Assembly (NCBI RefSeq): GCF_021869535.1
Contig: NW_026262701.1
Span: 43,400,001 to 43,464,000 of the forward strand
Direction of reading: 5' to 3'
Source: Mytilus californianus
Lineage: Eukaryota
DNA: 64,000 nt
In this document: one piece after another, positions 11,475 to 41,383 of the stretch
Numbering within the stretch: the first letter of the stretch is position 1
How the letters are laid out: every line of letters starts with the position of its first letter
Program-made: the position numbers and the translations under genes
The notes under the pieces: model-generated
Told to the model about the DNA's origin: nothing
Database searches by the model: none
What the model saw: the letters and a program-made list of their open reading frames with translations, nothing else

Positions 11475-11538
11475 ATGGTGTTCATTTACATTTTCATAAT
11501 TCTTAGTGTTGATTTTGTTCATGTGATACTTGCAATTG
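11475..11538 (+). CDS. Receptor gene exon 1: signal peptide MVFIYIFIILSVDFVHVILAI
   Basis: AAAATGG start context, hydrophobic 21-mer, phase-1 donor G|GTGAGT that joins in frame to the FN3 exon (G+AT = Asp). Confidence 0.7.
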
Positions 11539-11671
11539 GTGAGTAAATTTTCAAGTATACATAATGTTTATTGACGTCGAATAAGCAAATTGATGACTAT
11601 ACATACATGTAAGACTTCAGAATATAATTGTCTGGAGAATTTCAAAACATATCTTCAAAAAAGAGGAACCA

Positions 11672-13958
11672 ACCAGACTCAAGCTGGCAGCCACTTTTAG
11701 CAGCCAATCAAGATAGCAGCCACTTTTTTCCAGCAGCCAATTTTGATGATATGTCTAAAAATTAAAAAACTGTATAAGACTCAAACGTTCCAAAAATCTC
11801 AAAATATTAGTTAAATATAATTTGACAGCGGAGTCCAACATTTTTACGGCTTGTCGTGATTCTAAAAAGATGACAGTCCGATTTAAATACCAATGGTGAC
11901 TGCAGGAACTTTTTTTCGGAGGACACTGTTTGTTTAATATAAAAAAAATGTACAATTTAAAATCGTGTTTTTCTTTCTTTTTCTCGTTTTTTTTATTCCT
12001 TATGACTAGGAGGTACAGAAACAATGTATGAATAGAAAATGAAAAAAAAACCAAAGTACAACTGCCATTGTTAACAATGGATTTAAGTAAGTTGTGAGGA
12101 ATCTTGTTATATATATATTTCCTTGAACTGAATAAAAAAGATGCAATGTACGACAGAAAAATTACATACATAATTTCCATACACTCGGCATCCTCAAAAA
12201 TCGAGTATTTCAGTTGAAACCATTTTCAATATCTATTGCTGTATATATGAAATGAAAACATTTCGATATACATGTAATGTTAATCTTTTTTTTAATGTGA
12301 ACAAGTATTTTCTATAAAAATACTACATGGACTAATTTGTACGGCATGCGAAATTACTGATAACTGAAATTTTACTTGTCAAATGTGCCAGTACAAATAA
12401 TTGATATATAACTAAATCTGTGGTAGCCAGACGGGACCGGATCCCAGAAAAATATTTAAGTGGCGAATAGTCTGAGTCAACACCTTTAAAATGAGCTAGG
12501 TCTGGTTTGGAACTTTGCAGTAGGGCCTTACCGAGGAGTACCGAAAGAATGTGTAGTTGATATAAAAAGTATGTTAAGGGGCAACTTTTAACCCCTGTGG
12601 TGGCCAGACGGGCCTGGATCCCAGAAAAATATTTAAGTGGTGAAAAGCCTTGGTCAATACCTTTGAAATGAGCTAGATCTGGTTCGGAACTTTGCCGTAG
12701 GGACTTGCCGAGGAGTACCGAATGAATGTGTAGTTGATGTGAAAAGTACGTTAAGGGGCAACTTTGAACCCCCGTGGTGGCCAGACGGGCCTGGATACCA
12801 GAAAAATATCTAAGAGAAGAATAGCCTGGGTCAACACCTTTTTCTGGGATCTGGGCCCGTCTGGGCACCACAGGGGTTCACAGTTGCCCCTTAACGTACT
12901 TTTCATATCAACTACACATTCTTTCGGTACTCCTCGGCAAGTCCCAACGGCAAAGTTCCCAACCAGACCTAGCTCATTTCAAAGGTGTTGACCGAGGCTA
13001 TTCGCCACTGAAATATTTTTTTGGGATCCGGGCACGTTTGGACATTGCAGGGGTTCAAAGTTGGCCCTTAACGTATTTTCCATACCAACCACACATTCGG
13101 TACTCTTCGGCATATCCCTACGGCAAAGTTCCGAACTAGACCTAGCTCATTCCAAAGGTGTTGACTGAGACTATTCGCCACTTAAATATTGTTCTGGGAT
13201 CATGGCCCGTCTGAACACCACAGATTTAGTTATATGTCAATTATTTGTACTGGCACATTTTACAAGGAAAATTTCAGTTAAATTAACATATTGGTAATTT
13301 CGCATGCCATACAAAATAGTCCACGTAGGATTTTTATAGAAAATACTTGTTCACATTAAAAGACAGATTCACATTACATGTATATCGAAATGTTTCTATT
13401 TCATATATACAGAAATAGATATTAAAAATGGTTTGAACTGAAATACTGGATATTTGAGGATGCTGAGTGTATGGAAAGCCTGTATGTAGTTTTTTCTGTC
13501 GTACAGTGCATCTTTTTTTATTCAGTTCAATGGAAATATATATAACACGATTCCTCACAACTTACCTAAATCAATTATTAACCATGATGGTAGTTGCACT
13601 TTGATTTTTTTTATTTTCTATTCCTACATTGTTTCTGTACCTCCTAATCAAAAGGAATTAAAAAACGAGAAAAAGAACGAAAAACGATTTTAAATAGTCC
13701 TCCAAAAATAAAAGGGCTGCTAGCATCATTGGTATATAAAACGGATTGTCATCTTTTGAGAATCACGACAAGACGTGAAATGTCGAATTCCGCTGTCAAA
13801 GGAGGTGCGTTTATATTTAACTAAGATTTTGAGATTTTTGGAACGTTTGAGTCTTATACAGTTTTTGGTTTTTAGAAATATCATTAAAATTGGTTGCTGG
13901 AAAAAAGTGGCTGCTATCTTGATTGGCTGCTAAAAGTGGCTGCCAGCTTGAGTCTGGT
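11672..13958. mobile_element. Foldback-like element: 2.3-kb palindrome with arms of about 1.15 kb and inner 177-bp tandem arrays
   Basis: ACCAGACTCAAGCTGGCAGCCAC ... GTGGCTGCCAGCTTGAGTCTGGT. Inverted homology runs inward to the junction at about 12840. CCAGACGGG recurs at 12427, 12604 and 12781 and is mirrored on the right arm. Confidence 0.9.
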
Positions 13959-14419
13959 CAATATAATACATGGTATAGTTAGTTGTCTTTATGATTAAAA
14001 CTCAATACAACGGATTTTTCCGTCAGGTCTGCTGTCAGACATATGATGCATTAATTTTGATCAACAACGGCTAATGCAAATTAAGTATTTGCTATAACTA
14101 AAATTTAAGAAGAAGCATGCATGGATACATGACAAGTGTATTTCATTCAAAATTTAACTAAACCTATTGCAAATCTAAAACTAGTTTGTAAGGTCTCAAT
14201 CATGATACCAACGATATACGGCTTCTGTTTTTTTTCTTGGTAAGAATGAGTTTAAGTTTCAACACATTCGTGATTCAAATTAATACAATTTACATAACTT
14301 TCTACACACGCTTCTTAATACAACGCAAAGTAAACAGAATAGTAAATACACAATTACGTATTTAATATAGATATAAAAATACCGTAATAGTTTGATACGT
14401 TTGGAGGAAATGTTTTTAA

Positions 14420-14532
14420 ACAATCACTAGGCATTCACATGGGAACCAACTGTGCTCCTCTTCTTGCCGACTTGTTCCTTTATTCATATGAGGCTGACTT
14501 CACACAGGAACTTCTTAGGAAGAAAGAAAGAT
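14420..14532 (+). mobile_element. Penelope-like RT fragment (second subfamily)
   Basis: GIHMGTNCAPLLADLFLYSYEADFTQELLRKKE. Confidence 0.8.
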
Positions 14533-14729
14533 TTGGTCTCATAGTCAATGAAATGTTTGCCACTGGACGTTAAGAAACTAACACTCAATCAATCAATATG
14601 ATTGTCAAAGAGACAAATTTCCACTTAGGATCACATCACATAGGATTTAGCAACTCTAGGTCACAGTACACCCTTCAACAAACATCATAACACAGCAAAT
14701 TATAAGGGCCAATCAAATTTCAAACGTCT

Positions 14730-14905
14730 ATTTACCTTAGCAAAACTTTTCGGAATTTTTTTTATCCTTAGTGCTCTTCAACTTTGTACTTTATTTGGCT
14801 TTCTATCTATTTTTTATGTGTCGAGCGTGACTGATGAGTCTTTTGTAGATGAAACGGGTGTATGGTGTGCAAAGTTTTAGCCTGATGTTCTTTATGATTA
14901 TTTTG
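14730..14905 (+). repeat. Retrozyme/PLE pLTR-like repeat carrying a degenerate type I hammerhead ribozyme
   Basis: CTGATGA (14831-37) GTCT-TTTGT-AGAT GAAA (14851-54) C-GGGT-G TA, then TGGTGT as the putative stem I partner of upstream GCGTGA. Confidence 0.65.
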
Positions 14906-15227
14906 CAATTAAATAGAAAAAAAAATTCTATAACATTGTGTGATCATGCGGAAAATTTACATTATCAAAAATTGATATTAGAGTCAATTAGTGTAGGAAA
15001 CCGGTATATTTAATTCTTTGAACAGATAAGAGACTGATTTATTATTAAAAAACAGCAAACCTTATACATGATTTCACGTTTCAGAATAGCGTAAATGGGG
15101 ATCATCGCAAGACTATTTATTTCAAAGCGCATATCAATAGACATTAAAACAATATATTTTCAAATTTCTCGAGTGTCTCATCTGGATAAATAAACAGACT
15201 GTTTCAGAATCTTTCATTCATTTTCAG

Positions 15228-15524
15228 ATAAATCAGATCCACCGAAAGATGTCCGAGTAGACGTAATTGGTAATACAACTAACATTTCATGGATAATTCC
15301 TACTAACCAAGGGATAACTTGGTCTCGGATTTATCTCTACAATTCAAAGGAAGGCGGTGTGGATTTAGATTTAGAAAACGAACGTTATCATACAGATTTA
15401 AGATATCCAACTTCTAGTTTTGAGATTGCCTATTTAAAGATGTGTCATGAATATAATGTCAAAATTTATTTCTTACATAAATTTCAAAATTCAGAAGTCA
15501 CCACACGAACGTTTCGGATAATAC
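15228..15524 (+). CDS. Receptor gene exon: fibronectin type III domain
   Basis: TTTTCAG| ... |GTGAGT, 297 bp, phase 1-1, no stops: KSDPPKDVRVDVIGNTTNISWIIPTNQGITWSRIYLY...TSSFEIAYLKMCHEYNVKIYF...TRTFRII. FN3 Pro/Trp/Leu/Tyr pattern. Confidence 0.82.
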
Positions 15525-16129
15525 GTGAGTTGATTTTTTTCTTAAGAATTTCATAACTTGGCATTGCACAAGGTCATGTATTGAGATGATGCATTATTTT
15601 TATTTTAAATTATCAGATTTTTGCCAACAATTCTTTGATAGTTTCTGCGTGTATTAATAATACTTGGAATATTTATAATCTACAGTGGAATCGTACAATA
15701 TATGGTTGTAAGACTAAATTGTGATCCTATTGAAATGTTTAGATTCGTACTAAATCATACTATAAAAATAAGAAGATGTGGTATGATTGTCAATGAAACA
15801 AATGACATAGAATAAAACAACTATAGGTCACCGTAAGGCCTTCAACAATGAGCAAAAGCCCATACCGCATAGTCAGCTATAAATCGCACTGAAATGACAA
15901 ATGTAAAACAATTCAAAAGAGAAAACTAACGCCTGATTTATGTAAAAAACAATGAACGAAAAACAAATCTTATATGCAGCAACAAAACGACAACCAGTGA
16001 ATTACAGGCTCCTGACTTGGAACGGGCACATACAGAATGTGGCGGTGGTAAAACGAGTTTGCTGGCGCCAAACCCTTCCCTTACCAGGGACAGTTGTGTA
16101 AAAGTACAAAATAAGAACAAACTATATAA

Positions 16130-18300
16130 ATCGGCGGAAAAGAACTTAGTCCATCAGATTGATACAAAGATGAAAAACAAGTAACAAAAACATAGACCGG
16201 ACGTGGCAGGGTATTTATACATCCCAATAACAATAAAGATACTAAGAACAGATCTGAGAGTACTCGCAGTTACTGACAACTAGTTCAAAGCCAATAACAA
16301 CTTATAAAAACATAATTCATCTAAGACTAAAATACCAATCATTTAACATCCAACATCAGGTGAATTTAGTGTAAAGCCGTCATAAACAGTCAGAGAAAAC
16401 ATGACCTTGTGCAATGCCAAGATACAGATTTCGACAGGTTGTAGAACCGTGAATGTGCATATGTATATTACAATAATTTTTAGCTTGGTTTTAATTTACT
16501 AATATAAAAAAATCAATATTAAATCCAATAAAAACAATATTGAAAGATCTATTACACTGTTGAATTGGTAACCTTTTTGAATAAGTTTTTTAAAGGATCG
16601 ATAAGTTTACCCGAATCGTATCTTAATTTCCGGGATTGGTAAACACATCTCCGTAAAATAAGGATGTGTTATCCCGTTTGTTAGAAATTTCTACAGGTAC
16701 AGCCAAACTGTCAAACCAAATATGTGTATCTATAAAAGAACTTAGTAAAAGTTTTAGGTAATTTGTGTTAACGAAATCCCCGACTTAATAATTCACCAGT
16801 TATACATAGATAAAGTTAATTGAAATCGAAAACATCACTACAGACACGGACATAGCGAACGAGTTGTGATATATAAATACCGTAAGATGGTGCCATAGGA
16901 ACATCACCGCCCAAAAAAGGAAAATTAACAATAGGGAACTAAAAATCTTACCTTTTGTCGTAACTTTTTGTGAAGAGTTTCACGTGTAAAACTGAAATGT
17001 CTAGGAAAGGACATTTGTTACCGTTTATATTTGATTTATTCAATGTAAGTTCCTTCGGGTAAATTTCGATATTAAATTCAGAAAATACGTGATTATTTAA
17101 CGAAAAAATATCATCAAGTAAACGGTATGTGGTGTTGGATTTATCAATTAAATGCAATTAAGACGGGTCTTTACTGAGTTTGGCCAGAAACAAGTCTGCT
17201 ATTAAAGGAGCGCCATTGGTGCCCATAGGAATACCAACAACCTATCGATAAACTGTATTGCCGAAACGTACATTAATGTTGTCAAAGCGAAAATTTAACA
17301 GCTTCAATCATTTCATCACACCTCCAGTATTTACCTTTCTCATATATAGAAGAAGGCTTTAAATGAGTTGAGCAAATATATCTGTAATCAGATTGTTCAA
17401 ACGAAAATTTAATTAAAAACTAATGTTTGATAAGATGGTGCTACATTTGTAAAGTGGAGCATTAAGAATTGAAAGGTAAAAACTGTCATTAGAAGCAAAT
17501 AACCACCCAATGCACGTAATTTATTTATTTAATTTAATGTTCAGAAAAGGCCGTAAGCTGTGATGTGGTTATTCTATGATTGTTTACTATATGACTCTTT
17601 GTTGAGCGCACGGACCTGAACGTAGAAGAATTGATAATGCTATTCCTAAAAACGTCCGTGTAGTATTTACGTCATAGTACCACCACATTGTTGGCTGTTT
17701 TGTCAGTCGGTATAAGCATAAACTGCATTGCACATGTTTCCAGTACTTAAAGTGTGTTTCTCATTCTAGTAGGCGTATTATGGTCTCTTTAATTTATTTC
17801 TAAATTATTTTCAAAATGTAATATTCGAATATCCACAACATTCAAACATTTATTTAAATAAGAATCAAGAGATTTTTGTATCAGATTTTTCTTATTTACA
17901 CCAATTTTTACAATACGATGAAAGAGCCTCTTTTATGATTTGACAACACTGTTTCCAATCTATTTTAGATGATGAACGATATTTTGGTCCTTTTTTCAAC
18001 AGTTTTTGACCCCTTGGTCTTGAACGATATTGAGGTCCCCTGTAATAACATGCATGGCCATAGGGATCATGTCTAAAATTCGACGATTCGTAGTCTCAAA
18101 TTATTTTCTACACTGACGTCTGATGTTACTGACATAGAATTAAAGATTAAACGTCTGCCGATGTTTTTTGTATGTATACGAATGAATAGGTGGTTCTGTG
18201 TAATCAATACAGGGAGGTATATTTTTATCAGATTTTTCCCGTTTATATCAATTTTTACAATACGATGAAAAGGCGTCCTTTATAGAATAAAAGAATAACA
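16130..18300 (-). mobile_element. Degenerate Penelope-like retroelement (RT region plus 3' tail)
   Basis: GPQYR, TFQFLMLHFTN (cf. TFDFSTLYT), GIPMGTNGAPLIADLFLA, YRLLDDIFSLNN, PFLDIS, FPIVNFPFLGGDVPMAPSYGIYISQL. Many stops and frameshifts. Confidence 0.85.
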
Positions 18301-19797
18301 AAAATATTATATACTGTAATCTTGAAATAATACAATATGAATGGACATGTCAAGGTAAACATAACCACTGTTTGTCAAAAACTTGCTTGAGAGCTAATGA
18401 AATACTTCTTAGTCTTTAACTTTAATACAAGGATACAGATCAAACATTCTTATACATAGATTTGATACCTCAAATTAACATTAAAAGAAGCAGTTTTAAT
18501 GAAAATAATACGTTCCTTTATCAAACATCGTTCCCAATATCCCAGTTGCGTATAGTGCAGTCGAAGTCTTACAGAATGTTATCCGACTGTACCTAATCAG
18601 AAATATGACAGTTGGTTTGTTTATATAGTCGAACTTTTGGTTTTTTGCGGTTTTATTAATGCCCCCTTTTTTTAATTAACCGTTGCGATTCGTAGTTTTT
18701 TTTAACACTTTCTAGTACAGTGAGCATGATTCAAGTTTGTATGGTATAGGACTTCTTGGATGACATGTAGTTTAGAGCACATGACTGCGAATGCTATTTT
18801 ATCAATCAAAGAGGGTAATTTGTATTTGATTTCTATGTATAAGATATCTACTTGGACATTTATTTCAAGCATATTTGTCTAATTCCGCGCCATTTTTATT
18901 TATCAATTTCATATCTACATGATATCTTGATAATAATCAACGTGTTTATGCTCTTGTCCATCCAGCTAATTACCTCTTTGTTTAACATGTATTTCGATAT
19001 CAAGTTTTCTATCTTGCAACAAACCTTCTTAGCATATTTAGTCTACATAACTGGTATAAGAACTAATTTTACAAGTCATGTTCTCTCAAACTGATCTTGT
19101 TTTATGTTGGGTTATAACATTACGGACCAAGGTTAGGCAAGGATTAATCGTTTATCAACCCTTTAATCCTGTTACATTTTGTGTATGCATATCCAACCCA
19201 GGACCCGGCTAAAAACTGGTTGTCGTTGATTATATTTACTGTCTGTAATATTTGGTTTCGTCTACGGTATGGTTTTTGCCAATTGTATTGTCCGTATTGT
19301 TAGCAGTTTGTTTTCCACATCACCACTCCTTATTATAAACACGTGCTTCATTGGCTTTCATAGCGTATATAAGAATTGAGAAATTTGTGTAAAGTTATAT
19401 AGTCGGCCATTTTATTGCCTTGCAGAAATGATAAATATGAATGTTTGATATACCTTTGGTATATGCAACTAATCTGAGTTAATTTACAGTGTTGCTTAGT
19501 CTTTAGTTCTATGTTGTGTCATCTGTACTATTGTTTGTCTGTTTGTCTTTTTATTTTTGGCCATGGCGTTGTCAGTTTGTTTTCGATCTATGAGTTTGAC
19601 TGTCCCTCTGGTATCTTTCGTCCCTCTTTTACAGATGTATATGGACTAAATAATGATGAGTATGAATAATAACAATGAAATTTCCTTTAACCATCTTTCA
19701 TAGGTAATGTTTTTAGATACCAATCATATAAATTTGAATAAAGTAAGAAGAAAAACACCTTACTTAAAGGAAGTCTCTTAAGATATTTTTATTATAG

Positions 19798-19854
19798 GAA
19801 AGAATGGAGATTTACATATAACAATGGTTTACCTTTCTTATGAACAGTTTATTC
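19798..19854 (+). CDS. Possible linker micro-exon of receptor gene (KNGDLHITMVYLSYEQFI)
   Basis: TATTATAG| ... C|GTACGA, 57 bp, phase 1-1, open frame. No domain support. Confidence 0.3.
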
Positions 19855-20619
19855 GTACGAAACCTTGTATCTTAAACGATAACATATTTTAAACAAATTT
19901 CGATAGGATGGACACAACTTACTGCCTTTATAATTATTTAGACCAGACTTTATATTCATTCATATAAAAAATATTAGGTACCTTTTGCATAATGATACGT
20001 CCTTTATTCCTCGAGTTATACAAGGAAATATGTTTAACAATGTACAACAGTTAAAGGACCTACTTTGTTAACATGTATAAAAGGTTATACAACTTACTTG
20101 TTTCTAGAAAATTATAAGAATTGTTCTGACATTGCAATTTTATAAATGGATATGCAAAATTAAAAAACGTTTAATTTTTGCAAAGAATTAAGATAAATAT
20201 CTCAACTTCATAGCATGAATAGTAGAGTTATGACTGACAGTCTATTTTACTGCAACATTTCAATAATATTTCATTCTAAATTGAGGTACTTTAATGCGTA
20301 TTCCTAAAATTGATGAATAAACATAACTTCTGAATGTTTATGATAGTTTAAACTTCTGGTAATTTCTACAAAACTGTACTGTTTAATATGAAAAAATATA
20401 GAGAGCAAGTTTATTGCTTATAAGAAACGTCTTTGAAATTTTTGTTTCTATTATGTTATTTTATTGAGACTGAACACTTTATAATAGCCTGAGTCCTTCA
20501 TTTCAGGTATAGGTGAAAATTTAACTAAATATAACACACATGTCATTATTTTCTTTATATCAGCTATAAAACTTATCAAAATTAAGAAAAAATCTACCCT
20601 TAATGACATTTTTTGTTAG

Positions 20620-20673
20620 TGGGGCAGGATACTATTACTGATCAAGAAAACCAGAGATACCCAATGAATTTTT
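20620..20673 (+). CDS. Probable linker micro-exon of receptor gene (GQDTITDQENQRYPMNF)
   Basis: TTTTTTGTTAG| ... T|GTAAGG, 54 bp, phase 1-1, open frame. Confidence 0.5.
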
Positions 20674-22265
20674 GTAAGGCTAATGTTGGTCATTCCTTGA
20701 TTTTTTGTAGAGATTTGGGGACTGTTGTTTGTATTTTTGTTAGTTTTCAATTTTATTATTTTTTCTCTTTTTTTCTTCAACTCAATATCCCACATGGTTT
20801 CATTTTGTCACACTGGAATCTCCTGCAATATTCTTTATTTACGTTTTTGCACTGTGATCATCATTATTCATTGGCAATTTCTCATCGAAAATCCACAAAA
20901 CTCTCTTATTGTAGATAACAGTATTGAGGGTAATTTTATGATATACCATGATACGCTATGAGCTTCCAATGTTTTCAAAAATCACTTTATTATTCAGAAG
21001 ATAGAACATGTAATATTGATGACATCTTGAAAAATGAGAAGTTGTCTGTAGCTGATATCTGTCCCTTCAATTGACTGATATTGTACAACACAAATATAAG
21101 ACAACCGGTTACAGCAGACAGATGACATATTTTAAAATGATATATCATATAGCATGTATGTTAATTTCAAGGATAAGGACATTGTGTGCCTTATTTACTG
21201 CACGCAAGGAAAAGAAAAACAAAGGAATATCAAAAATCATAAATGCAATACAAATAAAGACAAAACAATTTTCAAAAATAAAACAATACACTGAAAACTG
21301 AAGATTTAGCAAAACCAACCATAACCAACACAGGAGGTACTCGAAATAAAAATGTCTTCATATTTTGGTCTTAGATATGTCGCTTTGGCCGACAACATCT
21401 CTTTTAACAAGTAAAACTGATAAAAAACACACAATTCAACTCTTCAACCCGCCTCACCGTATATTTACGAATAGAAACCATGTGAATATACAATAAAGCA
21501 TTCAATATGAAAAATGCTTTTATAGTGAGCAAGATAGGATCTCCAAAAATTTACAGCGATCATTTGCACATCAATAAGAGAGTGGTACAGCTCGATTTGT
21601 CTTCAACAACTGAAGAAAAAAATCGCATAATATTTACATGATTGTTTTTATTTTGTTATATTATTTTCATAACTTAACCCGAGATAAAAGAAGTGCTCTA
21701 TAATAGAACGTCTTAAAGAATAATGTACATCCATGCATTTCTGGATATACATTTTAATGTGCATTGTGTCAGTTCATTTAAACAAAACATTGTTAAGGCA
21801 CGTATGAGGAACACATATACTCTTCAACTTCGACAACACATATTTCACAAAGAATGGTTAACCAATGAGCACGAGACTCTGAAATGTCGATTATTTCATG
21901 TTAAATGCAAATAATACGATGAAGTTCAATAGTGATTTTCCCGTTTTATTTTATCAATATACTTGTTATTACTGTATTACCAATGACGAAAAAATGCAAA
22001 CCTATTTCACATGTGTTACTGAATAAACATTATTTTTTCATTTAATGAAAATGGTAAAAAGCAACTACTTAAAGGATAATGCTACATAAGTTCTAACCTT
22101 ATTAGTTTAAAAATGATTCTGAATGCATGTTTAAAAACAAAATAAAACATAATGCAACAATTACACGGACAACGACAAAGGACTTGGTAGAGGTTTCCTC
22201 ATAGTAACCTATTTTGCCCGAAATTCCATAATGAATGAAAATTTATTTGTTCATTGATGTTTTAG

Positions 22266-22538
22266 CTACACCGAGTTTAACATTTCGTCCTGAGCATCCG
22301 TTTGTCGGCAATGATATCACCTTCACCTGTAATCCAGTGGTACATTGGTGTCCAGGCGACACACTTACAGATATGTCATATAAGTTTTTGGGGTACCAAA
22401 GAGGCGATACTGACAATAATACGTTAACGATACATGCACTTGCTAAGTCGGATAAAGGAATAAACATATCCTGTCAGGCGACTGATGACCTTGGAAAAGT
22501 CTTTTACCTGAGTAATACGGTAACATTAGATCCGTACT
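22266..22538 (+). CDS. Receptor gene exon: Ig-like domain 1
   Basis: TTTTAG| ... T|GTAAGT, 273 bp, phase 1-1: TPSLTFRPEHPFVGNDITFTC...NTLTIHALAKSDKGINISCQATD...SNTVTLDPY. Confidence 0.88.
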
Positions 22539-22778
22539 GTAAGTTTTTTTAGTTTTAAGTAAAACAAAATCAATATAAACATGACATGATTAAAGCTATT
22601 ATTATCCCTTATTTAAAGAATATGTCGTTTTCCTTCAATCATAAATGTTGCAAGTATTGAAACGCGCATGTGTAAATAATATATATCGATAAAGTTTTTT
22701 TGGTAACAAATATAATTCTTAACAAAATACATGATGATATTGATTAATTGTTGCGTGATTGACGTCCAGGAACAGTTA

Positions 22779-22965
22779 CTGTAAACCAACTATTTTTCGC
22801 AGGCGATTTATTTTCGCGACCTTCGCGAGAAGAAAAATAACGCGAATATAAATCTTTGCGAAAATTTAAAACCTTGATCTTTCCTTGTCCTACTACATCA
22901 AGTAAATTTGAAAATCGCAAAATTAAATCGCCACGAATTGGGATAGAAAATAAGTTGGTTTACAG
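22779..22965. mobile_element. Tc1/mariner-like MITE (TA TSD) inserted in a SINE tail
   Basis: TA|CTGTAAACCAACT ... AGTTGGTTTACAG|TA. Confidence 0.8.
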
Positions 22966-24496
22966 TATTTCATGTAGATCAAGTATACATACTTGCAAAA
23001 TATATCATTATATTAAAGTGTAAATGAGATTGCAATATTAATATTATTGTATAAGTGTTCATTGTACACATTTTCCATCGTTGCAATTTTGAAAAAAACA
23101 AATAAAGAATAATGCATTACAATAACCATTAAATTCACAAAACATTGTTTTGAGGGTTCAAAAACCTTAATCAATCGCTTACACCAGGCTCATCCTAAAA
23201 AACAGATGCACAAACAAAACAAACAACAACAAAATCACATTGTCCAGATAGCCTTACTTGGTACAGTCACAAAGTGGGTATTGATGAGGTGTAGTACCTT
23301 GCTTATTGTCGCAAACTTCACAAAATAACGATAGAATGGCATTTAATATGCCTCTTAATTTCATTTTAAAATTTACATCAGAGTTATCGAATTGTACATT
23401 ATTTATTTTAGTGTAATTGGGATATGTAAAATTCCTTCTTTTCCAATTATAAAGCACAATAATTGAATCATATATTAATAAAAATGTAAACCGTTCCTCC
23501 CGAAACCAAAGTTTTAGGATTGGGTATACTCTGAAAAAACTATTTGATTCAGAATGTCTTGAAATAATAATACAGAAAGGAATAGTGATCATTTGAAATG
23601 CGTATACACAATACTGTTTAAAAAGTACTTCTTGTTCCTATAAAAACAAGAAGATTTGGTATGATTGCCAATGAGACAACTCTCAGAAAGAGACTGTATG
23701 TTATAGAAACAAATAGAAAACCCATGCCCCTAACCAAATATGAATAGTCGTTGCCACTTAGGTCCGAATCATCTCTCGTCTACACTGTTTGATTATATAG
23801 ATATAAGAAGATGCGGTATGAGTGCCAATTAGACAACTCTCCATCCAAGTCACAATTAGTAAAAGGTAAACCATAATAGGTCAAAATACGGCCTTCAACA
23901 CGGAGCCTTGGCTTAAACCGAACAGCAAGCTTTAAAGGGACCCAAAAAATGACTAGTGTAAAACCATTCAAACCTAACTAACGGTGTAATCTATATAAAA
24001 AATGAGAAACAAGAAACACTTATGAGCCACATCAACAAACGACAACCACTGACCATCAGGTTCCTGAGTTAGGACAGGTGCAAACACATGCAGCGGGTTT
24101 AAACGTTTCAACAGGGGCCTACCTTCATACTAACCTGGAGTTGTGGTGTAACAATACAATATAGAAAGACACAAAATAAAATATCAATTGAAATGGCTTA
24201 ACTCAATCAAAAACGCATATTAACAAAAACAAGTAAACATACACTGAACGAATAAATTTGATCTAATACACAATATAAATACAATATTAATAAAAAAAAG
24301 GGGGGAGATGTATGCTTGTTTAGGCAATCTGTACTCGTCATTGTTACGATTAGTAATCATTTGTTCATGGTCATGGTTTTGTCTATTCGTTGATTTGTAC
24401 ATTTTTATTCTATCCAAATAGTTAACTAAAAAAAGTTTTGATTGTTTGTTTATTTATGTCTGTACTACTTTCGATGTTGTATTTCAATTTGTTTAG

Positions 24497-24790
24497 ATGG
24501 TCCTGACAAAGTTGTCCTGGATCCTGGTAGCACATCTATCAATGTAACAGAAAACAGTACATTAGGACCTATACATTGCACTGCAGCCTGCAATCCAATA
24601 TGTACATACCAATGGAAACACAAGGGGACAAGTCACTTTGAACTAGTCCAAAACAATTTACTATCAAACCAAAACCAAACTCTTACTGTGCATCACATAA
24701 AGCGAAGCCAGAACGGGACCTACCGTTGTCAAGTGGATTACTATCATTATCACACTTATGAGATATCAGATGTATCAATCAATGTACAGT
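24497..24790 (+). CDS. Receptor gene exon: Ig-like domain 2
   Basis: GTTTAG| ... T|GTATGT, 294 bp, phase 1-1: (Y)GPDKVVLDP...GPIHCTAACNPICTYQW...TLTVHHIKRSQNGTYRCQV...DVSINVQ. Confidence 0.9.
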
Positions 24791-27700
24791 GTATGTATAA
24801 ATCAATTTGGAAACGTTAATTACTTGGAGCTCAGTATGTTACACAAAAATCAAATAAATATTGAATCTCGTTTATTTTATAAAAGACATTAAAATGTAAA
24901 GTTAAGTGTGAACTCTATTTATGTTAATCTTTACAGTAACTTTATCGCGTAATAATATATACATATACAGGTTACATTTCTGTTAGTAATGATAGGTTAA
25001 AGTTATTGGTACATCCAGATATTAAGCATAAACATGTAAATTTCAGAGTTTGAACGTCTTAGTTTGTTTAGTACTTGTGTTTTTTTGTTGTAAACAAGTT
25101 AAAAGCTAAATATAAAGTTTTAGTTATAAATCCAATAGATCGCAATTCAAGCATATCTGTAATTGTCTAGTGAGTTGAGACACACACATATCTTATCGGT
25201 CAACAAAATATTCGTGATTGTGACCGTAAAATATATGTAGTGTCGAATTCCGTCGTTCTTCCTCATTACTCTTTAAGATGAAATTTTATGTAAGCAGAAC
25301 ACCCCGTTTAATAAAGTCCAAAAAGTTTAGACATACACGAGTGTAACGTGTCAATGGAGATATATAAACGTCATACGATGGAACTTTAGAGTATGTAACT
25401 GCAGAGAAATATAGAATTATGGCATTTTTGTTTTTGATACTGACCTCATCAGCAAGAATATCAAGCGAGCACGCTAGGGCAACATGTCCTTATTCTTTTA
25501 ATCCGTAATTTGTCTTAACTTCATTATTTTTTTTTTCTTGAGAACATAAAATAAAATTATATAGTGAGTAAAACTATGTGTACGCGTACAAAGCGTTGTG
25601 ATATTTGTTCGTTTCTACAGTTGAACGGCAAACGCCTGAATCTGACAAATAAAGGTCAATCTGTCGACACAAAAAGTACCCGTATGTGAAATGTTCACGC
25701 CAATAAACAGCGCCACCTATATTTTTTTCTTCGTCGTCTTTCAGAACGATGTTCCGTTCTGTAGGAAATTAAAACATTTAATTAACTAAAACAATGGATA
25801 GTAAGTGTAGAAAACAAATTAAAAGATATATTTTCACATGACTGATTATGCATGATATGCTGGCAATGTGCGCAATGTCCCTTTGATTGAAAATTAGTTT
25901 GGTTCCTACGTCAAAATGGCGGATTCCAATGTTTACATTTTTCCATCAACACAAAAGCTGACCCAATTTCGTGTCCGGCCGTGCATATGCAAATTATTTA
26001 TTGTTTCGGGTAGCTTATCCAATGGCATTCACATCATATAAGTGGCTGTACGTTACCATCCATCGTTGCAAAAGTAGGATGTGTTTGGTGTGTACATCTC
26101 TGGAATGTTGTGTATTCAATTTTTTACAGTAAAAATCAATGTTATCTTCATTATATTTCCATGCATACACAAGTCATAATAACAAATACATTTTTTATAA
26201 AACTTATAATGTAAACAGACATGTTTAACCGTCTGTCTAAGCAAACAAGCGTGTTAATAAAGCTGATGGGTCGTTTTATAATTCAAGCACAGCAGACAAA
26301 CACGTGGTCGTTGATTGATGTTTGTTTGCTAAAAATGCACGCTGTTGTTACTGCATACTTAGAAATAGCCACTTTGTTGTTACTCTTGTTTAATAGCAGA
26401 TATAATTAGTATTTACAAATAGATTGTATTGCTTTTAAGAGTTATACAATACAACTTGCATAAGAAATACTAGTAGGTCTAGCTAAGTCCGTATAAAAAA
26501 TTGAGGCAATGATGTAAATTACCATATTATGATTAACATTACAGCGGCATTTTTTGCATTTTTTGCATTTTATTTATTTCATATATGTACATCGAGAACA
26601 ATAGATTAAATGTACAGGGGTTTAATTCCCACCCTAGGCATTAATTGTAATAGGTGGGAGCAAATAAGGCAGATTGGCCTATATATATAGTGACCCCGCA
26701 TCTACTCTGTTGTTCCCAAGTCTCAAAATTCTGCCCGCTCATGATAAGTCCCAACATCTTTCTTTTCTAAGTATAAAGCAGCTCCTTTCAGGATTAGTAA
26801 GGGAGCACTTTATATATAGCCCAATGGCTAAGTCCTGTCTTTTTTGTCTCTCTTATTTTCTTATTTATATTTTTGTTATTTATATATTTCTTATATCTCT
26901 GATATTTTCTTATTAGCCACCAAGCCACAACTCCTCTTTTTCCTATGCTGCCTAAAAACAATGAACCGGTTCTGTTCATTGTCGATGTCTGTAAAGTGAC
27001 TTATAACTGCTAACAGCCACATTTTTTGGACTCTGGTGGATAGTTATGACTGTTATCTCATTGGCAATCATACCACATCTCCTTATTTTAGTACGTGTTA
27101 ATTATTTCAAAAACTAAATTCAAAAATAATTAATGTTTTTTTTATTAATTGAATAATGTCCTATTGCAATAATGCTGATATGTGATACATATATAACTTT
27201 ATATAACTTTTTCTGAAAAAGTAATAATCTAGATATGTCACAAAAAAGAGATTTTTGGTAAAAGTTAGCAAAAATGTCAGTATTTTAACCACATTTCGGC
27301 ATAGGAAATGTAGAGCGCATCGTCTGACAAGCTAAATACTGTAAATTCAGAAAGTATTGTGAGGTTTTAATAAATGTTAATAATGCGATTGAGTGATTAT
27401 TGCAAAAATAAGAATTCGCATTCTGATTTGATACTGTGAAGATTTTTTCCAAAATCGGAATAATGAATCTCTCATGTTTGTTCATTCTTCAAAAAATTCT
27501 GAATTTACTGTGTTTAAGTCAGCTTTGTTTTCTTTTGTTTTTTAATTGCCTATGCATTTTAGAGCAGTGAAATATGAATTTGGATTAAATTTGAAGTTGA
27601 TTCAGTAAATTCTATGACATAATAACACTCTATTATTTATAAAAAGCATATTCAGACTCTATTTACTGATCACCTTAACTAATCATTCATTATTCAATGA

Positions 27701-29957: not shown

Positions 29958-30250
29958 ATGGTCCTGACAGAATTATCCTTGAACCTGCAAGCACAGATAT
30001 CAACGCAATAGAAGGAACTACCTTAGGCCCTATACATTGTACTGTAACCTGTAATCCGGAATGTAAATACCAATGGGAATACAATGCGACAGGACATTTT
30101 GAAATCGTTCCAGTCAAATTGGTATCAAACCATGGCAGGACTCTTACTGTGCCACAAATTAAAAGAAGTCAGACAGGAACCTTTCGTTGTCATGTGGATA
30201 ATTATTGTTCTCAAATAAACAAGACAGTAGATGTAACAATCAATGTATTT
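29958..30250 (+). CDS. Receptor gene exon: Ig-like domain 3 (paralog of Ig2; donor position ambiguous)
   Basis: TCTAAG|ATGGTCCTGAC: GPDRIILEP...GPIHCTVTCNPECKYQW...TLTVPQIKRSQTGTFRCHV...DVTINVF. The homologous donor is 1 nt out of phase; an alternative phase-1 GT lies at 30276. Confidence 0.8.
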
Positions 30251-31351
30251 GTATTACTTCTGCAAAATCATAACTGTGACTTAAAAGAGCTTTACACGTT
30301 TAAAGTATTAACATATTTTAACTCTACCCCATGATAAGCCTTCAGTTAGTTGTCACTTGTAAGGTAGATTGTTACGCCAATAAAGAATGTTTTCAAATAC
30401 ATGATGGTTTCGGAATTTCGGAGTTTAGAACCGGAATAAAAGATTCAATTATATTTGTATACTCTCTGACCTATTTTATGCTAAAAGTAATATTGAATAT
30501 CAATGTACATATTATACAGCGCAAAATCAATTATAAATTAGATAGCAAAATGCAAAGACAAAAAAAATGATAAAATATCAAAAGTGAACTGAGCTAAGGT
30601 AAGTATATTAAACACATACTAATCATTGAGTTTAATTTATATAACTTCCAATAAGTACCACTTATTGGGGTCTCTGCTGTTTATAAAAATGGCCAAACTC
30701 TTTCTACGAGTCATCGGTTCGGGCGAGACAACAAAAAAACGTGCACCTCCTTACATAGCAATTGGCAAGAATAGACAAAATAATAAAAGTTTAGTTTTGA
30801 ACTATGGACTCTTCTTCACACGTAACTCATTCTTTACACTATCATTTCATATTATGTAAATGTATTCTTCTTATATTTAAAGGGATTTGGATAGTTTGCA
30901 CTATGAAATAATTCCAAGAATATTGGAAACATATGCAACTTTTAAGAATAACTCTACTAATATAATGCAGCGTCATTATTTCGAAGTTGGCAATCTCTAG
31001 GACAATGTCATCGGTCTTGAAAGCAAGAACGCAAAAGTAATAACTAAGTTGAATCTAAATAAAAGATAATATATTCCTCAACACAACTTTATCAAATTTC
31101 GTTATGATCATCTAGTTTTTATTTGAAATTATAAGCAGAACTAAATCCCAAACAAAATAATAAATACTGAAGAATGAACAGAGTTATGTATATTTTAAAT
31201 TATCAATCAAATATTCTATGAACGAATTCCTACAATGTACATGTAAAATAATGTTATACTCATTACATTTGTGTTATGCTCATCACTTTAAAACGCATAT
31301 GATAGCCTTTTCTTTTAACATAATCATTGTAATATTTTATTTTTCCAATAG

Positions 31352-31474
31352 TGTTCGAGTGTCCAACAAAAGGTTTTCAAGTAGTCACATCAGGCATGTT
31401 TGATGTAGGAATAGCAACATTAGTTGTTGGTTTGGTAGCTCTAATTTCAGCAACAACTCTCTTTATTCTTAAAC
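31352..31474 (+). CDS. Receptor gene exon: transmembrane helix
   Basis: TTTTCCAATAG| ... C|GTGAGT, 123 bp, phase 1-1: FECPTKGFQVVTSGMFDVGIATLVVGLVALISATTLFILK. Confidence 0.82.
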
Positions 31475-33805: not shown

Positions 33806-33836
33806 GTGTGAAAACCAAGAATGTAAGACCAAATGA
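33806..33836 (+). CDS. Receptor gene: basic juxtamembrane cytoplasmic micro-exon (R)VKTKNVRPN
   Basis: TTTTTTGCAG| ... GA|GTACGT, phase 1-2. Compatible with the phase-2 exon at 40528. Confidence 0.55.
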
Positions 33837-36110: not shown

Positions 36111-36699
36111 CATACGTAGATTTGTCATTTACACTTTTTTAAGAATGTTTTACATTGGTGAATGTGTTTATTTTTTAACTTACTGATGGAGCATAGGGGT
36201 ATCAATACTGAAATTAATTTTAGATGTGAATCAACATAATATAAAATATACAATATGCATAAATACAAAGAAACTTTTGATAAGTTTGAAATACATTTAA
36301 ATTTTGAAAGTTCAGTTCATTGACTGATTTCCTTCACAGGCACTTTAAACAAGTTTTTGCATATTTTAACAATAAGTTTCCGTCTCTGTTTATATACAAA
36401 AGGTCTTTGTTTATATATAAGAGGTCATTGTTTATATATAAACAAAAGGAGGAAATAGCTTTAAATTTCCAGCTAAAACAAACTAGTTTTCCTTTTCGTT
36501 AAAATGTTAAAATTATACTCAAAATAGTATTATTAAACAGATTAAAAATTTCAGCTCATGTACGTCTTCCAACATATCAAAGTGCTGTTTATGTTTATTG
36601 AAATACAGTATACTGAATAATAAACAGAGCTTAAACAGTTGGATACATAATGGAGTAACACGTGGCATACGCCTAACACTCAGTATTTTAAACGTTTAT

Positions 36700-37895: not shown

Positions 37896-38190
37896 GCTAC
37901 AATGTAGTAAAATATATGCCTTTTTAATTCAACTTAATTTTGTTAATTCTGAATAATATCTCTGCATATTCACCTCCATATTATGTATTCAAATGATGAA
38001 TTTTCATTCTAAGCGGTTATCTCGATGCTTAATTAGATGACGTCTTGTCTAAAAAGCCACGAAATGTTGAAATATTAAAAATATTTCATTTATTGTGAAT
38101 TGTTTCTTTTTGACTTTTTTGTATACGTTTCAGGCTTCAATGCAAAAAAGAGAATTTAATTGAACACGGTTGAAAACAAATTTGACAGCT

Positions 38191-38228
<38 letters not shown>

Positions 38229-40527
38229 TTATCATAATTATCATACTTATAGTCTGCCAAACATCTCATACGACAATATTAAGCAGAAATTATTTTTGAC
38301 GTAAATTATTTTATTTGCGATTGTGACCAAAAAATTAACGACTTGTTTTGTTCATAATTTGTGAAACATCGACATTCACAGATATTACTTTTCTACCTTA
38401 ATGATTAATTCAGTAAAACATTCTGCAATATGTCTAAAATAAATATTATAGACCACATTTATATATAATGCGCAAGTAGCATGTAATGACAATATTTTCT
38501 ACCGCACATTGGCGATTCTTTTATTTATCATGCATAATCCAGCATTCACTTGCAAGAGCTTTGGTTGAATTTAAATCAAAGTGGTTTAACTGCTCCGTCG
38601 AATGGCCTTTACATATTAAGGTCCGTGCATGGCCACAAAAAGTTGTCCTAAACATGTTTTGAGGAAAAAACGACGATGTACTGGTGTCTGAATTCACAAG
38701 AGACATGTTTTTGCGGTCTGAGATTTCTCAAAACCAGTATAGTCTGATTTGTAATTTTACCGATTGTGACATTTTGTTTGAGTCTAGATTCGCATGGCGA
38801 CTGAAGCATGCATACATGTAGCAATAAAGTCTTTACCTATCAACCCATCCTGTCTCGCTACTTTTGGAGTTTGCAATTACCTCATGTTTTGGTTGCTACC
38901 TTGATTTGTCTTAATCAATTTACGAAATTTGAACATCTGTAAACTTCCTGTTATCCATCACCAGTTTAAAGGGTTGTGTTATTAATTTCAAATGCAATTA
39001 GAAATAATTTAGATAAGCAAAATATAGTAACATTAGGGTAATACTCTGTTGTCTAATTACAGAATCAACACCTATACAAGACCCCAGGTAATTATAAAAA
39101 TATTTATATTTTACAGCACTCTAATTTCTTATGATAATTTTGTTTATTTAAAATAGGATAATTTTCTAATATTCATGCAGAAATTTAGAACCCGCTTCAA
39201 AAATAAGTTTTTATCTGAATAAAACATGTTGATTGCTTTGACGTAAAACTTGCAAACTTTGAGTTGAATAAAGTATCTTACATTTAATTGCAGACGAACT
39301 CAATCAACTTATGATACAAGTGTCACGAGTCTAAAAAAAATCTACAATATAAACGTTAAAAACCAAAACAAAAAGAAAAAAAATGGTTAAGAAAATTTGA
39401 AAAGGGTTTTCTAACATTTAGAATTTTAAGATTTTGTATTTAGTGTTTCATACATAGGTTTTTTTTCATAGTTTGGAGTGAAAAATGAATATATATGTGT
39501 AGATATATATAACGATGTTCTTCTCTGCCCGTCAATCTTTTTGATACCTTTGAGTGTTTATTTTTGAATAAGGTACTTAATTTGCTCAGCTTATGTTATT
39601 TGATATTCAGTCGTGAATTTTTTTGTTTTCATTGCACTGTTTTCATGCTAATAGTTTCAGATCTGTTTCGCACCAACTTGTTGTTTAACAAAACCTTTAA
39701 TTCGTATTAATTAACAGGAAATGCTAATAACATACTCCTATATGACCAAAACCGATCTTAAAACAAAAGCCAAATTCATCTTAATAGGTCAACTTTGCCT
39801 GAGGGAGTTGAAAACTTAGTTTCTTAATAATTTCTAAATTCATAAACAGACAATTTACGGAAAGTTTGTTATAAATCATGCCAGTAAAGCGGTCATCAGA
39901 TCTGCTTTGCAGTCATGTACACACATGTACTGGTAGACGATAATTTTAATTTTAGTCATATGAAATAAGGATATGTGGTGTGATTGTTAATGAGACAAAT
40001 ATTCAAGAGTCTAAAAGACATCTATTGAAGCAAATATAGGGGACCATACGGACTTTTAACAATATGCAATGAGCAAAAACCATTAAGTCAGCTACATGTA
40101 TAAAAATGTGAAACTATTCAAACGAAAAATCCAACAGCCTGATCATGAAAAACAAATCAAAGAAAAACAAATGCAACCAATGACAACCACTGTAAAACGG
40201 GCTCCTGATATGTTTGTGAGCGCTCAAACCTCCCCTCACTTAAACAGAGATGTAACAACAGACCCCAATAGGATTGTAAAAAGTAAAATAACAAAAATAT
40301 CAAACTCCAAGGAAAATTCAAAACGGAAAGTCCCTCATCAAATGGCAAAATCAAAAGTTCAAAAAAATCAAACGAATGGAAAACAACTGTCAACATGTTT
40401 TAAATACCCAAAAACTAATTTGCACGATATCTATTTTTTTGATTCAGGAAATTATTCTCTTTGAGTTTTACTTTTCATAACTTTTTGTCAATAATGAAAC
40501 GCATTGATAATATCTAAATATTAATAG

Positions 40528-40593
40528 TTCTGATATATATGAAGAATGTGGAATAGCACCTGGTGAGAATACTTACGAAAACATTGAAGACGG
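40528..40593 (+). CDS. Receptor gene: cytoplasmic exon with two tyrosine motifs (SDIYEECGIAPGENTYENIED)
   Basis: TTAATAG| ... GG|GTAAGT, 66 bp, phase 2-2, open. Strong donor; peptide composition typical of receptor tails. Confidence 0.65.
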
Positions 40594-41355
40594 GTAAGTA
40601 CTTATTTGCTTCGAAAACATTTATATAAGAGACATTCGGAGTGCAACTTGACTAACACTTTGCTTTGGTATCTACTAAATACATGTACATTAAATGCATT
40701 TGTAACATTTTCATTTGTGTCTTTGTTTAAATGAAATGTTATCTGGTATTCGGGAGGTGACTTAATTTTAGTTACGTCATCATATTGGACAATGAAAAGG
40801 CTTAAACATCACATACATGTATATATATTAAGTTAAATTTTGTACAAATTATGTGCTTTTCTGAACGTCTCTGTAAATACGTAGTGCCTAATCCATGTTT
40901 TTTTTCAAATTATGTAGAACAAACAAAAATATTTTCTCGTGAAAATCTAAACTTTTAATCACGCATATACGATTCATCCGATAATTTGACTTTTCATATA
41001 ATTATCAATATCCATTTTCCGAGTAGTTGTATATTCGTTACCATGGTTACAGGACATTAAATCAAAGACACGGATTCGTAATGAAATTTACACACCAACT
41101 AAATAACCGTCCAATAAAAATAGATATACGAACAAAGAGATTCAACGAACAATACATGGGCCAGTTAGCCCGACTTGGTAAGAGCAAAACATGTATTGTG
41201 GTTAGGCCAGATTTAGGTGCGAACCACCACCATTTTGTCTAGCAAGACCATCTTTCGTTTAACACGCAATAACAAAACGTGTACAGTCCAACTACCGACA
41301 GGACGACAATACAGTAAACAAACAAATAGAGTAATGCATATAATTTTAAAAGCAG

Positions 41356-41383
41356 GATTAAAAAAATACTAAGGACCAAGTAG
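41356..41383 (+). CDS. Possible terminal coding exon (G)IKKILRTK*
   Basis: TTTTAAAAGCAG| phase-2 acceptor giving a stop at 41381-83. Not unique; other acceptors are possible. Confidence 0.25.

What the first reader, a model, noticed from the sequence alone, without database searches (positions are those of the whole stretch)
11475..41383. Hidden 30-kb receptor gene with unusual domain order: SP-FN3-(linker)-Ig-Ig-Ig-TM-Tyr tail
Seen: a chain of stop-free exons with canonical AG/GT sites joining in compatible phases (1-1 through the ectodomain and TM, then 1-2 and 2-2), apart from the Ig3 donor. The ORF track catches only fragments. Established: most Ig/FN3 receptors (Dscam, NCAM, Robo, RPTPs) place Ig domains N-terminal to FN3. 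Inference: an N-terminal FN3 followed by three Ig domains and a short Tyr-bearing tail suggests a lineage-specific bivalve receptor, possibly an immune receptor from an expanded family.
Basis: partly seen in the sequence, partly recalled or inferred. Interest (0 to 1): 0.78.

Follow-up and report, generated by a model that had tools for sequence, protein, structure and literature searches.

The report
Damaged mussel FN3-first Ig receptor gene
The window holds a real mussel gene for a single-pass surface receptor (signal peptide, one FN3 domain, three Ig domains, membrane anchor, tyrosine tail). It belongs to a receptor family seen so far only in Mytilus and already present, uncharacterised, in protein databases, and this copy has lost a splice site and a conserved tail exon, so it is probably a recently disabled member.

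Summary
The exon chain is real. The SP, FN3, Ig1, Ig2, Ig3, TM and tail exons align collinearly, at 70-82% amino-acid identity, with a 509-aa Mytilus edulis protein (P0001). That protein has exactly the order SP-FN3-Ig-Ig-Ig-TM-tail. Its locus (L001) also matches the window through the introns.

The FN3 call holds: the profile-based AlphaFold model has pLDDT 90.5 and its best PDB matches listed are FN3 domains. The FN3-first order is shared by at least 28 Mytilus proteins from five species, which RefSeq names "CEACAM-like", "nephrin-like" or "hemicentin-like". No paper on the family was found.

- The 54-nt "linker" exon has no homologue and lies in window-specific sequence, so it is rejected.
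- A conserved 25-nt exon (39063-39087) and a terminal exon (41817-) were missed.
- The odd Ig3 donor results from a 5-nt deletion that removes the donor G.
- An ~850-bp deletion has removed the 77-nt exon that encodes the family's most conserved tail block (Y..V..RSNP....YSTLQ).

With orthologue-like splicing, both lesions shift the reading frame. The exons are otherwise open and constrained (dN/dS 0.56). The one true RNA run sampled shows no reads on the FN3 exon.

Verdict: a genuine member of a Mytilus-restricted IgSF family, probably recently disabled or forced into variant splicing. Interest is modest.

The parts
11475..11538 (+). Exon 1: start codon and signal peptide (21 codons plus 1 nt), donor GTGAGT, phase 1
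   Evidence: Sequence. Aligns with the L001 first exon with an in-frame 3-nt difference. Similar to the family signal peptides of P0036 and P0005.
15228..15524 (+). Exon 2: N-terminal FN3 domain (297 nt, phase 1-1)
   Evidence: Pfam fn3 at 23.8 bits, E 5e-5. 71% identity to P0001 residues 19-116. AlphaFold model on a 30-sequence alignment has pLDDT 90.5. The best PDB matches listed are FN3 domains, TM 0.76-0.81.
20620..20673 (+).
   Evidence: No homologue in any family protein. No counterpart in L001. 55 comparable chance candidates occur in the same intron. Zero RNA depth.
22266..22538 (+). Exon 3: Ig1 (273 nt, phase 1-1)
   Evidence: Ig_3 E 3.9e-4 and I-set E 1e-3, both below the Pfam cut-off. 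77-83% identity to P0001, P0002 and P0022.
24497..24790 (+). Exon 4: Ig2 (294 nt, phase 1-1, donor GTATGT)
   Evidence: Ig_3 at 37.3 bits, above the cut-off. 81% identity to P0001. The best PDB sequence matches are the IgC2 domains of CEA and CEACAM1.
29958..30250 (+). Exon 5: Ig3, a tandem exon duplicate of Ig2. Its donor was destroyed by a 5-nt deletion between 30247 and 30248. The remaining GTs are at 30251 (phase 0) and 30276 (phase 1, GTGACT).
   Evidence: Ig_3 at 31.3 bits and I-set at 27.5 bits. 56% aa and 73% nt identity to Ig2, with similarity confined to the exon. 82% identity to the third Ig domain of P0001. Deletion shown in alignment A1.
31352..31474 (+). Exon 6: stalk, transmembrane helix and stop-transfer K(R), donor GTGAGT. 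A second in-frame AG gives an alternative start at 31360.
   Evidence: Sequence. 73% identity to P0001, with a 12-nt in-frame insertion.
33806..33836 (+). Exon 7: 31-nt juxtamembrane exon (VKTKNVRPN), phase 1 to 2
   Evidence: Identical over the exon to L001. Matches P0001.
38462..38468 (+). Scar of an ~850-bp deletion. The orthologue has here a 77-nt exon (phase 2 to 1) that encodes the Y..V..RSNP....YSTLQ block.
   Evidence: L001 24770-25619, which includes the exon at 24793-24869, has no counterpart anywhere in the window. Protein and motif searches were negative.
39063..39087 (+). Exon 9: conserved 25-nt mini-exon ((E)STPIQDP), AG/GTAATT, phase 1 to 2.
   Evidence: 7 of 8 residues match P0001 ESRPIQDP. 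Sequence and splice sites. The L001 counterpart is at about 26523.
40528..40593 (+). Exon 10: tail exon with the two C-terminal family tyrosines (DIYEECG ... TYENI). Its donor G|GTAAGT overlaps an in-frame TAA at 40595-40597.
   Evidence: 73-75% identity to P0001 and P0022. Aligned with L001.
41817..41823 (+). Start of the terminal exon (G TCA TAA: one more residue, then stop), followed by the 3' UTR.
   Evidence: Homologous to the last coding exon of L001, which ends at 31187.

Best explanation
The locus is a member of a Mytilus-restricted family of type-I membrane receptors of the immunoglobulin superfamily. It is probably the positional orthologue of M. edulis P0001. The family plan is a signal peptide, an N-terminal FN3 'cap', CEACAM-like IgC2 domains (three here; Ig2 and Ig3 are an old exon duplication), one transmembrane helix and a short tail with four conserved tyrosines.

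By analogy with other IgSF receptors, the ectodomain would bind a ligand or a neighbouring cell, and the phosphorylated tail tyrosines would recruit SH2-domain partners. This mechanism is inferred, not shown.

The copy in this window carries two lesions. A 5-nt deletion removed the Ig3 splice donor. An ~850-bp deletion removed the 77-nt exon that encodes the first two conserved tyrosines. With orthologue-like splicing, each lesion shifts the frame. The first gives a stop 10 codons into the TM exon. The second gives a tail ending ...RPNEINTYTRPQF*. The copy is therefore most likely a recently disabled gene, or at best one that makes a truncated or soluble product. Its exons are still open because the damage is young.
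For: - Architecture and orthology: the FN3 exon finds only 21 cluster representatives in 1.84 billion proteins. The best is P0001, with FN3 at residues 19-116. P0001 aligns collinearly with all major window exons. L001 matches the window through the introns at 67-90%.
- FN3 fold.
- Ig domains.
- Family size and taxa.
- Tail conservation (Y35, Y55 and Y67 invariant, Y21 nearly invariant).
- Lesions: donor deletion; exon deletion. Frame consequences were read (TM exon from 31352 in phase 0 gives CSSVQQKVFK*; tail exon from 40528 in phase 0 gives F*).
- Past constraint: dN/dS 0.56, dS 0.21, different from 1 at p about 0.002. The chance of no stop under 5-10% neutral change is 0.08-0.004.
- No protein encoded by this window appears among the family hits.
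- Zero RNA-seq depth on the FN3 exon in 10.3 million reads of the only true RNA run.
Against: - All five large coding exons are intact. The one indel in the TM exon is in frame.
- In-frame bypasses exist for both lesions. For Ig3: donor GT at 30251 with the second AG (exon start 31360), donor GT at 30276 with the normal acceptor, or Ig3 skipping.
- The RNA test sampled about 6% of one run of unknown tissue.
- The lesions were not checked against raw DNA reads. An assembly error or a hemizygous allele is not excluded.
Confidence: 0.55

Rival explanations
1. This is a working gene with lineage-specific splicing. It would be essentially the reader's model without the linker: SP-FN3-Ig1-Ig2-(Ig3)-TM and a short tail that keeps only the last two family tyrosines (YEEC-x8-YENI). 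The loss of the first two tyrosines would make it a signalling variant of the family, in the manner of paired or decoy receptors.
For: - The exons are open and constrained.
- The 33836|40528 junction is phase-compatible.
- Ig3 can be kept in frame through GT 30251 plus AG 31358-31359, or through GT 30276.
- Skipping Ig3 is also in frame.
- RefSeq models of relatives show exon skipping in this region: P0022 lacks the TM exon.
Against: - It needs two independent non-orthologous splice choices.
- The substitute donors (GTATTA, GTGACT) are weaker than the ancestral GTATGT.
- The conserved mini-exon 39063-39087 keeps good splice sites and would have to be skipped.
- The most conserved tail block is lost.
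- No RNA reads were found, and no annotated protein from this window appears among the hits.
Confidence: 0.33
2. The lesions are not features of the species. They are assembly errors, or belong to one hemizygous or degenerate haplotype, while an intact allele exists. Presence/absence variation is common in mussels (general knowledge).
For: DNA runs of the same species label hold only about half of the words sampled from 15200-24800, which suggests high polymorphism.
Against: A 5-nt deletion outside a homopolymer and a clean ~850-bp deletion with a 7-nt filler are not typical consensus errors. The flanks align well on both sides.
Confidence: 0.1
3. The FN3 exon and the Ig exons belong to two different genes.
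For: No spliced read was obtained. Some database models start at an intronic ATG just before Ig1 (P0024 and the first half of P0022).
Against: - The FN3 exon ends open in phase 1 and Ig1 starts in phase 1 without a start codon or signal peptide of its own.
- P0001, P0002, P0023 and the second half of P0022 join the homologous FN3 and Ig1 directly.
- More than 20 longer family members also begin SP-FN3 and continue into the same Ig domains.
Confidence: 0.02

Closest known systems
Mytilus edulis unnamed protein P0001 (509 aa, contig CAJPWZ010002340 of GCA_905397895.1; UniRef 'Ig-like domain-containing protein')
   Same: The exon order and domain order are the same: SP-FN3-Ig1-Ig2-Ig3-TM-tail. 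Identity is 70-82% per exon, and the introns are collinear.
   Different: P0001 has an intact Ig3 donor and the 77-nt tail exon, and it lacks the 12-nt insertion in the stalk. The window copy lacks the donor and that exon.
Larger Mytilus family members named by RefSeq 'CEACAM1-like', 'CEACAM5-like', 'nephrin-like', 'hemicentin-1-like' or 'NCAM1-like' (for example P0028, P0005, P0018, P0036)
   Same: They share the same signal peptide type, the same N-terminal FN3 subtype, homologous Ig1 and Ig2 domains, and the same four-tyrosine tail.
   Different: They carry extra domains: a second FN3 or a ~110-aa module after the cap, more Ig-like domains, and membrane-proximal FN3 domains. The window gene is the short three-Ig form.
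Vertebrate CEACAM1 / CEA
   Same: Among solved structures, the IgC2 domains of CEA and CEACAM1 are the best sequence matches for Ig2 (E 5e-12 and 5e-8). Like CEACAM1, the window protein is a single-pass receptor with a tyrosine-bearing tail, and the family is expanding quickly within one lineage.
   Different: CEACAMs start with an IgV-like N domain, not FN3. The CEACAM1 tail has canonical ITIMs, and the tail here does not. There is no evidence of orthology, and the RefSeq name is a best-hit label.
Ig/FN3 adhesion receptors with the usual order (NCAM, contactins, Dscam, Robo, LAR-type RPTPs)
   Same: The same two domain types occur in a type-I membrane protein. The FN3 model superposes on the FN3 domains of contactin, LAR and Tie2.
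   Different: In those receptors the Ig domains are N-terminal and the FN3 domains are membrane-proximal. Here an FN3 caps the N-terminus. FN3-like modules ahead of an Ig domain do occur elsewhere, for example in the leptin receptor (from my own knowledge, not tested here).

Membership tests
Mytilus FN3-first IgSF receptor family (P0001-like) | N-terminal FN3 domain of the family subtype directly after the signal peptide | tested here: met
   71% identity to P0001 residues 19-116. All strong hits place it at the N-terminus. Alignment A3. FN3 fold.
Mytilus FN3-first IgSF receptor family (P0001-like) | Homologous Ig1, Ig2 and Ig3 exons and a TM exon in the same order | tested here: met
   Collinear tblastn hits at 77-82% for the Ig exons and 73% for the TM exon. 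Intron collinearity with L001.
Mytilus FN3-first IgSF receptor family (P0001-like) | Cytoplasmic block Y..V..RSNP....YSTLQ (first two conserved tyrosines) | tested here: not met
   The exon is absent from the whole window. A deletion scar lies at 38462-38468. The block is the most conserved part of the family tails.
Mytilus FN3-first IgSF receptor family (P0001-like) | C-terminal block .Y[DE]ECG ... .Y[QE].. | tested here: inconclusive
   The block is present in the DNA (40528-40593). It is in frame only if the conserved mini-exon 39063-39087 is skipped.
CEACAM family (the name RefSeq gives to relatives) | N-terminal IgV-like domain followed by IgC2 domains | tested here: not met
   The N-terminal domain is FN3. 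Only the IgC2-type domains resemble CEACAMs.
ITIM-bearing inhibitory receptors | (I/V/L/S)-x-Y-x-x-(L/V/I) in the tail | tested here: not met
   The window tail motifs are SDIYEEC and ENTYENI. Position -2 is D or N, and the first motif has C at +3. The consensus is quoted from general knowledge.
ITAM-bearing activating receptors | Y-x-x-(L/I) followed after 6-8 residues by Y-x-x-(L/I) | tested here: not met
   The window has YEEC-x8-YENI, and the first half-site ends in C. The orthologue's lost exon has YNEV-x10-YSTL, which is also non-canonical.
Type-I single-pass membrane protein | Cleavable N-terminal signal peptide, and one hydrophobic helix followed by basic residues | tested here: inconclusive
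   The sequence shows a hydrophobic exon 1 (MVFIYIFIILSVDFVHVILAI) and a segment of about 23 hydrophobic residues followed by K-R-VKTK. No SignalP or TMHMM tool was available.

The most novel reading that the evidence does not exclude
The exon loss is adaptive rather than decay. Within a Mytilus-only, tandemly arrayed receptor family that has an FN3 cap and a four-tyrosine signalling module, this copy would be a natural 'tail-switched' or soluble partner. It would have the same ectodomain but lack the first two tyrosines or the membrane anchor. Such a copy could act as a decoy or counter-receptor, as paired activating and inhibitory receptors do in vertebrates. This would point to convergent paired-receptor logic in a mollusc.
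Probability: 0.1. Interest if true: 0.55.

Novelty: new member of a known kind. Interest (0 to 1): 0.3.

Why it matters
The analysis defines an IgSF receptor family that is so far seen only in Mytilus and appears unstudied. The family has an unusual N-terminal FN3 cap and a strongly conserved four-tyrosine tail. Genome annotations currently hide it under misleading best-hit names such as CEACAM-like, nephrin-like and hemicentin-like.

The window shows how such a family turns over: exon duplication (Ig2 and Ig3), transposon-swollen introns, and recent loss of a splice site and a signalling exon.

The family, rather than this copy, is the thing worth testing in mussel immunity or adhesion.

Tried and rejected
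- A word search with the FN3 exon alone was blank. The length window of 54-171 aa makes this uninformative.
- A single-sequence AlphaFold run on the FN3 exon failed (pLDDT 39). It was replaced by the alignment-based run.
- The RNA test was uninformative. The only true RNA run (X10, about 6% read) gave zero depth on the FN3 and linker exons and signal only on intronic repeats. Runs X1, X2 and X4, guessed to be RNA, are DNA of a ~95% identical relative, because their contigs cross exon-intron borders.
- The missing 77-nt exon was searched for by tblastn with five family tails, by motif scan in three frames, and by blastn of the L001 exon against the whole window. All were negative.
- The linker exon and the '(19798)' candidate were rejected.
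- No further family exons were found elsewhere in the window.
- Three literature searches found no paper describing this family.
- The idea that the locus is a CEACAM orthologue was rejected on domain grounds.
Full report
**1. The observation**

The window is AT-rich eukaryotic DNA with no N runs. On the + strand the proposed exons exist, with canonical sites and compatible phases:
- SP exon 11475-11538, donor GTGAGT.
- FN3 exon 15228-15524, 297 nt, phase 1-1.
- Ig1 exon 22266-22538.
- Ig2 exon 24497-24790.
- Ig3 exon from 29958.
- TM exon 31352-31474.
- A 31-nt exon, 33806-33836.
- A tail exon from 40528.

Pfam gives fn3 at 23.8 bits (cut-off 25). Ig_3 scores 37.3 bits for Ig2 and 31.3 bits for Ig3 (cut-off 30). 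Ig1 gets only weak Ig hits.

Ig2 and Ig3 have equal length and share 56% aa and 73% nt identity. The similarity stops at the exon borders, so this is an old tandem exon duplication in which both copies were kept. No other related exons lie in the window.

**2. Relatives**

A search of 1.84 billion representative proteins with the FN3 exon alone returned only 21 hits. All named ones down to P0019 are Mytilus proteins; the rest are unnamed ORF fragments from short Logan contigs. The two weakest hits are unrelated proteins matched over several stretches.

The best hit is P0001, a 509-aa M. edulis protein with 71% identity. It carries the domain at residues 19-116, directly after the signal peptide. 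It continues with Ig1-Ig2-Ig3, a TM segment and a tyrosine-rich tail.

P0001 aligns collinearly with the window exons: FN3 70%, Ig1 77%, Ig2 81%, Ig3 82%, TM 73%, tail 73%. Its locus L001 was fetched. It matches the window through the introns at 67-90% nt identity, from 11206 to 42113. L001 is therefore the positional orthologue or a very close paralogue.

A word search with P0001 lists 28 family proteins from M. galloprovincialis, M. edulis, M. trossulus, M. coruscus and M. californianus. Their names are CEACAM5-like, CEACAM1-like, hemicentin-1-like, nephrin-like and NCAM1-like. The full-length models begin with the same signal peptide and FN3 cap, and several N-terminally truncated models start further in. 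None of the 28 is flagged as encoded by the window.

With a 30-sequence alignment, AlphaFold folds the window's FN3 exon at pLDDT 90.5. The best PDB matches listed are FN3 domains, with TM 0.76-0.81. Among solved structures, Ig2 is closest in sequence to the IgC2 domains of CEA and CEACAM1, which explains the RefSeq names.

**3. Corrections to the gene model**

(a) The linker exon 20620-20673 is not supported.
- P0001, P0002 (M. coruscus), P0023 (M. trossulus) and the second half of P0022 join FN3 directly to Ig1.
- The peptide matches no family member.
- Its DNA has no counterpart in L001. It sits in window sequence (18579-21355) that does not align with the orthologous intron.
- 55 comparable chance mini-exons exist in that intron.

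- The 25-nt exon is present at 39063-39087 with AG and GTAATT.
- The terminal exon is at 41817.
- The donor that leads to the terminal exon overlaps the TAA at 40595-40597. The protein end is the same within one residue whether or not it is spliced.

(c) The 77-nt exon is gone. L001 24770-25619, which includes the exon at 24793-24869, is replaced by 7 nt at window 38462-38468. Protein, motif and DNA searches of the whole window find no copy.

(d) The odd Ig3 donor results from a 5-nt deletion between 30247 and 30248, relative to L001 and to both Ig2 paralogues. The deletion removes the G of the donor GT.

**4. Consequences**

With orthologue-like splicing both lesions break the frame.
- The only nearby GT (30251) leaves phase 0. 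Entry into the TM exon at 31352 then reads CSSVQQKVFK and stops.
- Joining 33836 to the mini-exon without the 77-nt exon gives ...RPNEINTYTRPQF and stops.

In-frame bypasses exist:
- GT 30251 with the second AG (exon start 31360).
- GT 30276 (GTGACT) with the normal acceptor.
- Skipping of Ig3.

All of these need weaker or non-orthologous choices. The lost exon encodes the most conserved part of the family tail. In 13 tails, three tyrosines are invariant and a fourth is nearly invariant, and the RSNP....YS.LQ block lies on the missing exon.

**5. Is the copy alive?**

Evidence for past function:
- The five large exons are open, and the only indel is in frame.
- Exon nt identity to L001 is 80-90%, against 67-90% for the intron parts that can be aligned at all.
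- dN/dS is 0.56 at dS 0.21, below 1 at p about 0.002.
- Under 5-10% neutral change, the chance of no stop in these exons is 0.08-0.004.

Evidence against present function:
- The two lesions.
- No protein from this window among the family hits.
- Zero RNA depth on the FN3 exon in 10.3 million reads (about 6%) of the one genuine RNA run, X10. Intronic repeats in the same stretch were covered.

The other runs that hold the stretch are DNA of a ~95% identical relative. Their contigs cross exon-intron borders (table 8). The RNA result is weak: one run, of unknown tissue.

My reading: a recently disabled copy, 0.55; a working variant with altered splicing, 0.33; lesions not representative of the species, 0.1.

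**6. Mechanism (inferred)**

By analogy with other IgSF receptors, intact family members should be surface receptors. The FN3-capped Ig stack would bind a ligand or another cell, and the four tail tyrosines would dock SH2-domain proteins after phosphorylation. None of the tail motifs fits the canonical ITIM, ITSM or ITAM patterns. The sign of any signalling is therefore open. An immune role is plausible for a fast-evolving, lineage-restricted family but was not tested.

**7. Comparison and novelty**

The gene is not a CEACAM, because the N-terminal domain is FN3 and not IgV. It is not a classical Ig-then-FN3 adhesion receptor either. It is a new, probably broken, member of a family whose proteins are already in public databases but for which three literature searches found no description. 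The FN3-first order is genuine and is a shared family trait. It is unusual rather than unprecedented.

**8. Limits**

- No spliced read was obtained.
- The single reads call covered 15150-21149 only, so the lesions were not verified in reads.
- The exons were searched one by one. The joined model was not built, searched or folded.

Noticed in passing
window 11668-13958: The 2.3-kb palindromic stretch in intron 1, noted earlier by the scan, is exactly absent from the orthologous M. edulis intron. L001 10181 and 10182 align to window 11667 and 13959. It therefore behaves as an insertion (foldback-type element) in the window's lineage.
   Followed up: partly
window 839-4423 (- strand): A Ty3/gypsy-type LTR-retrotransposon pol lies here, split over three abutting ORFs. 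Pfam finds RVT_1, RT_RNaseH, and Integrase_H2C2 with rve. The split ORFs imply frame breaks.
   Followed up: partly
window 15750-18000 and 19350-19750: These intronic repeats are very high-copy and transcribed. Summed contig depth reaches 650,000 in a DNA run, and the RNA run has tens to hundreds of reads per bin. The ~145-bp piece 19483-19627 is skipped by contigs of the ~95% relative, so it is likely a MITE-type insertion polymorphism.
   Followed up: no
P0022 (M. galloprovincialis) and P0013 (M. coruscus), related loci: These database models fuse the TM or tail exons of one family gene to the FN3 exon of the next. This implies head-to-tail tandem arrays of family genes, and read-through transcripts or annotation fusions. 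The second unit in P0022 also skips its TM exon.
   Followed up: partly
window 40592-40599 and L001 about 29905: The stop codon of the tail exon overlaps a strong, conserved splice donor (G|GTAAGT). The orthologue's annotated model uses that donor to reach a terminal exon that adds one residue.
   Followed up: partly
P0002 (M. coruscus relative): Its last 15 residues match the window's Ig3 exon read in a shifted frame. This suggests a frameshift or an annotation error in the third Ig exon of that species' copy.
   Followed up: no
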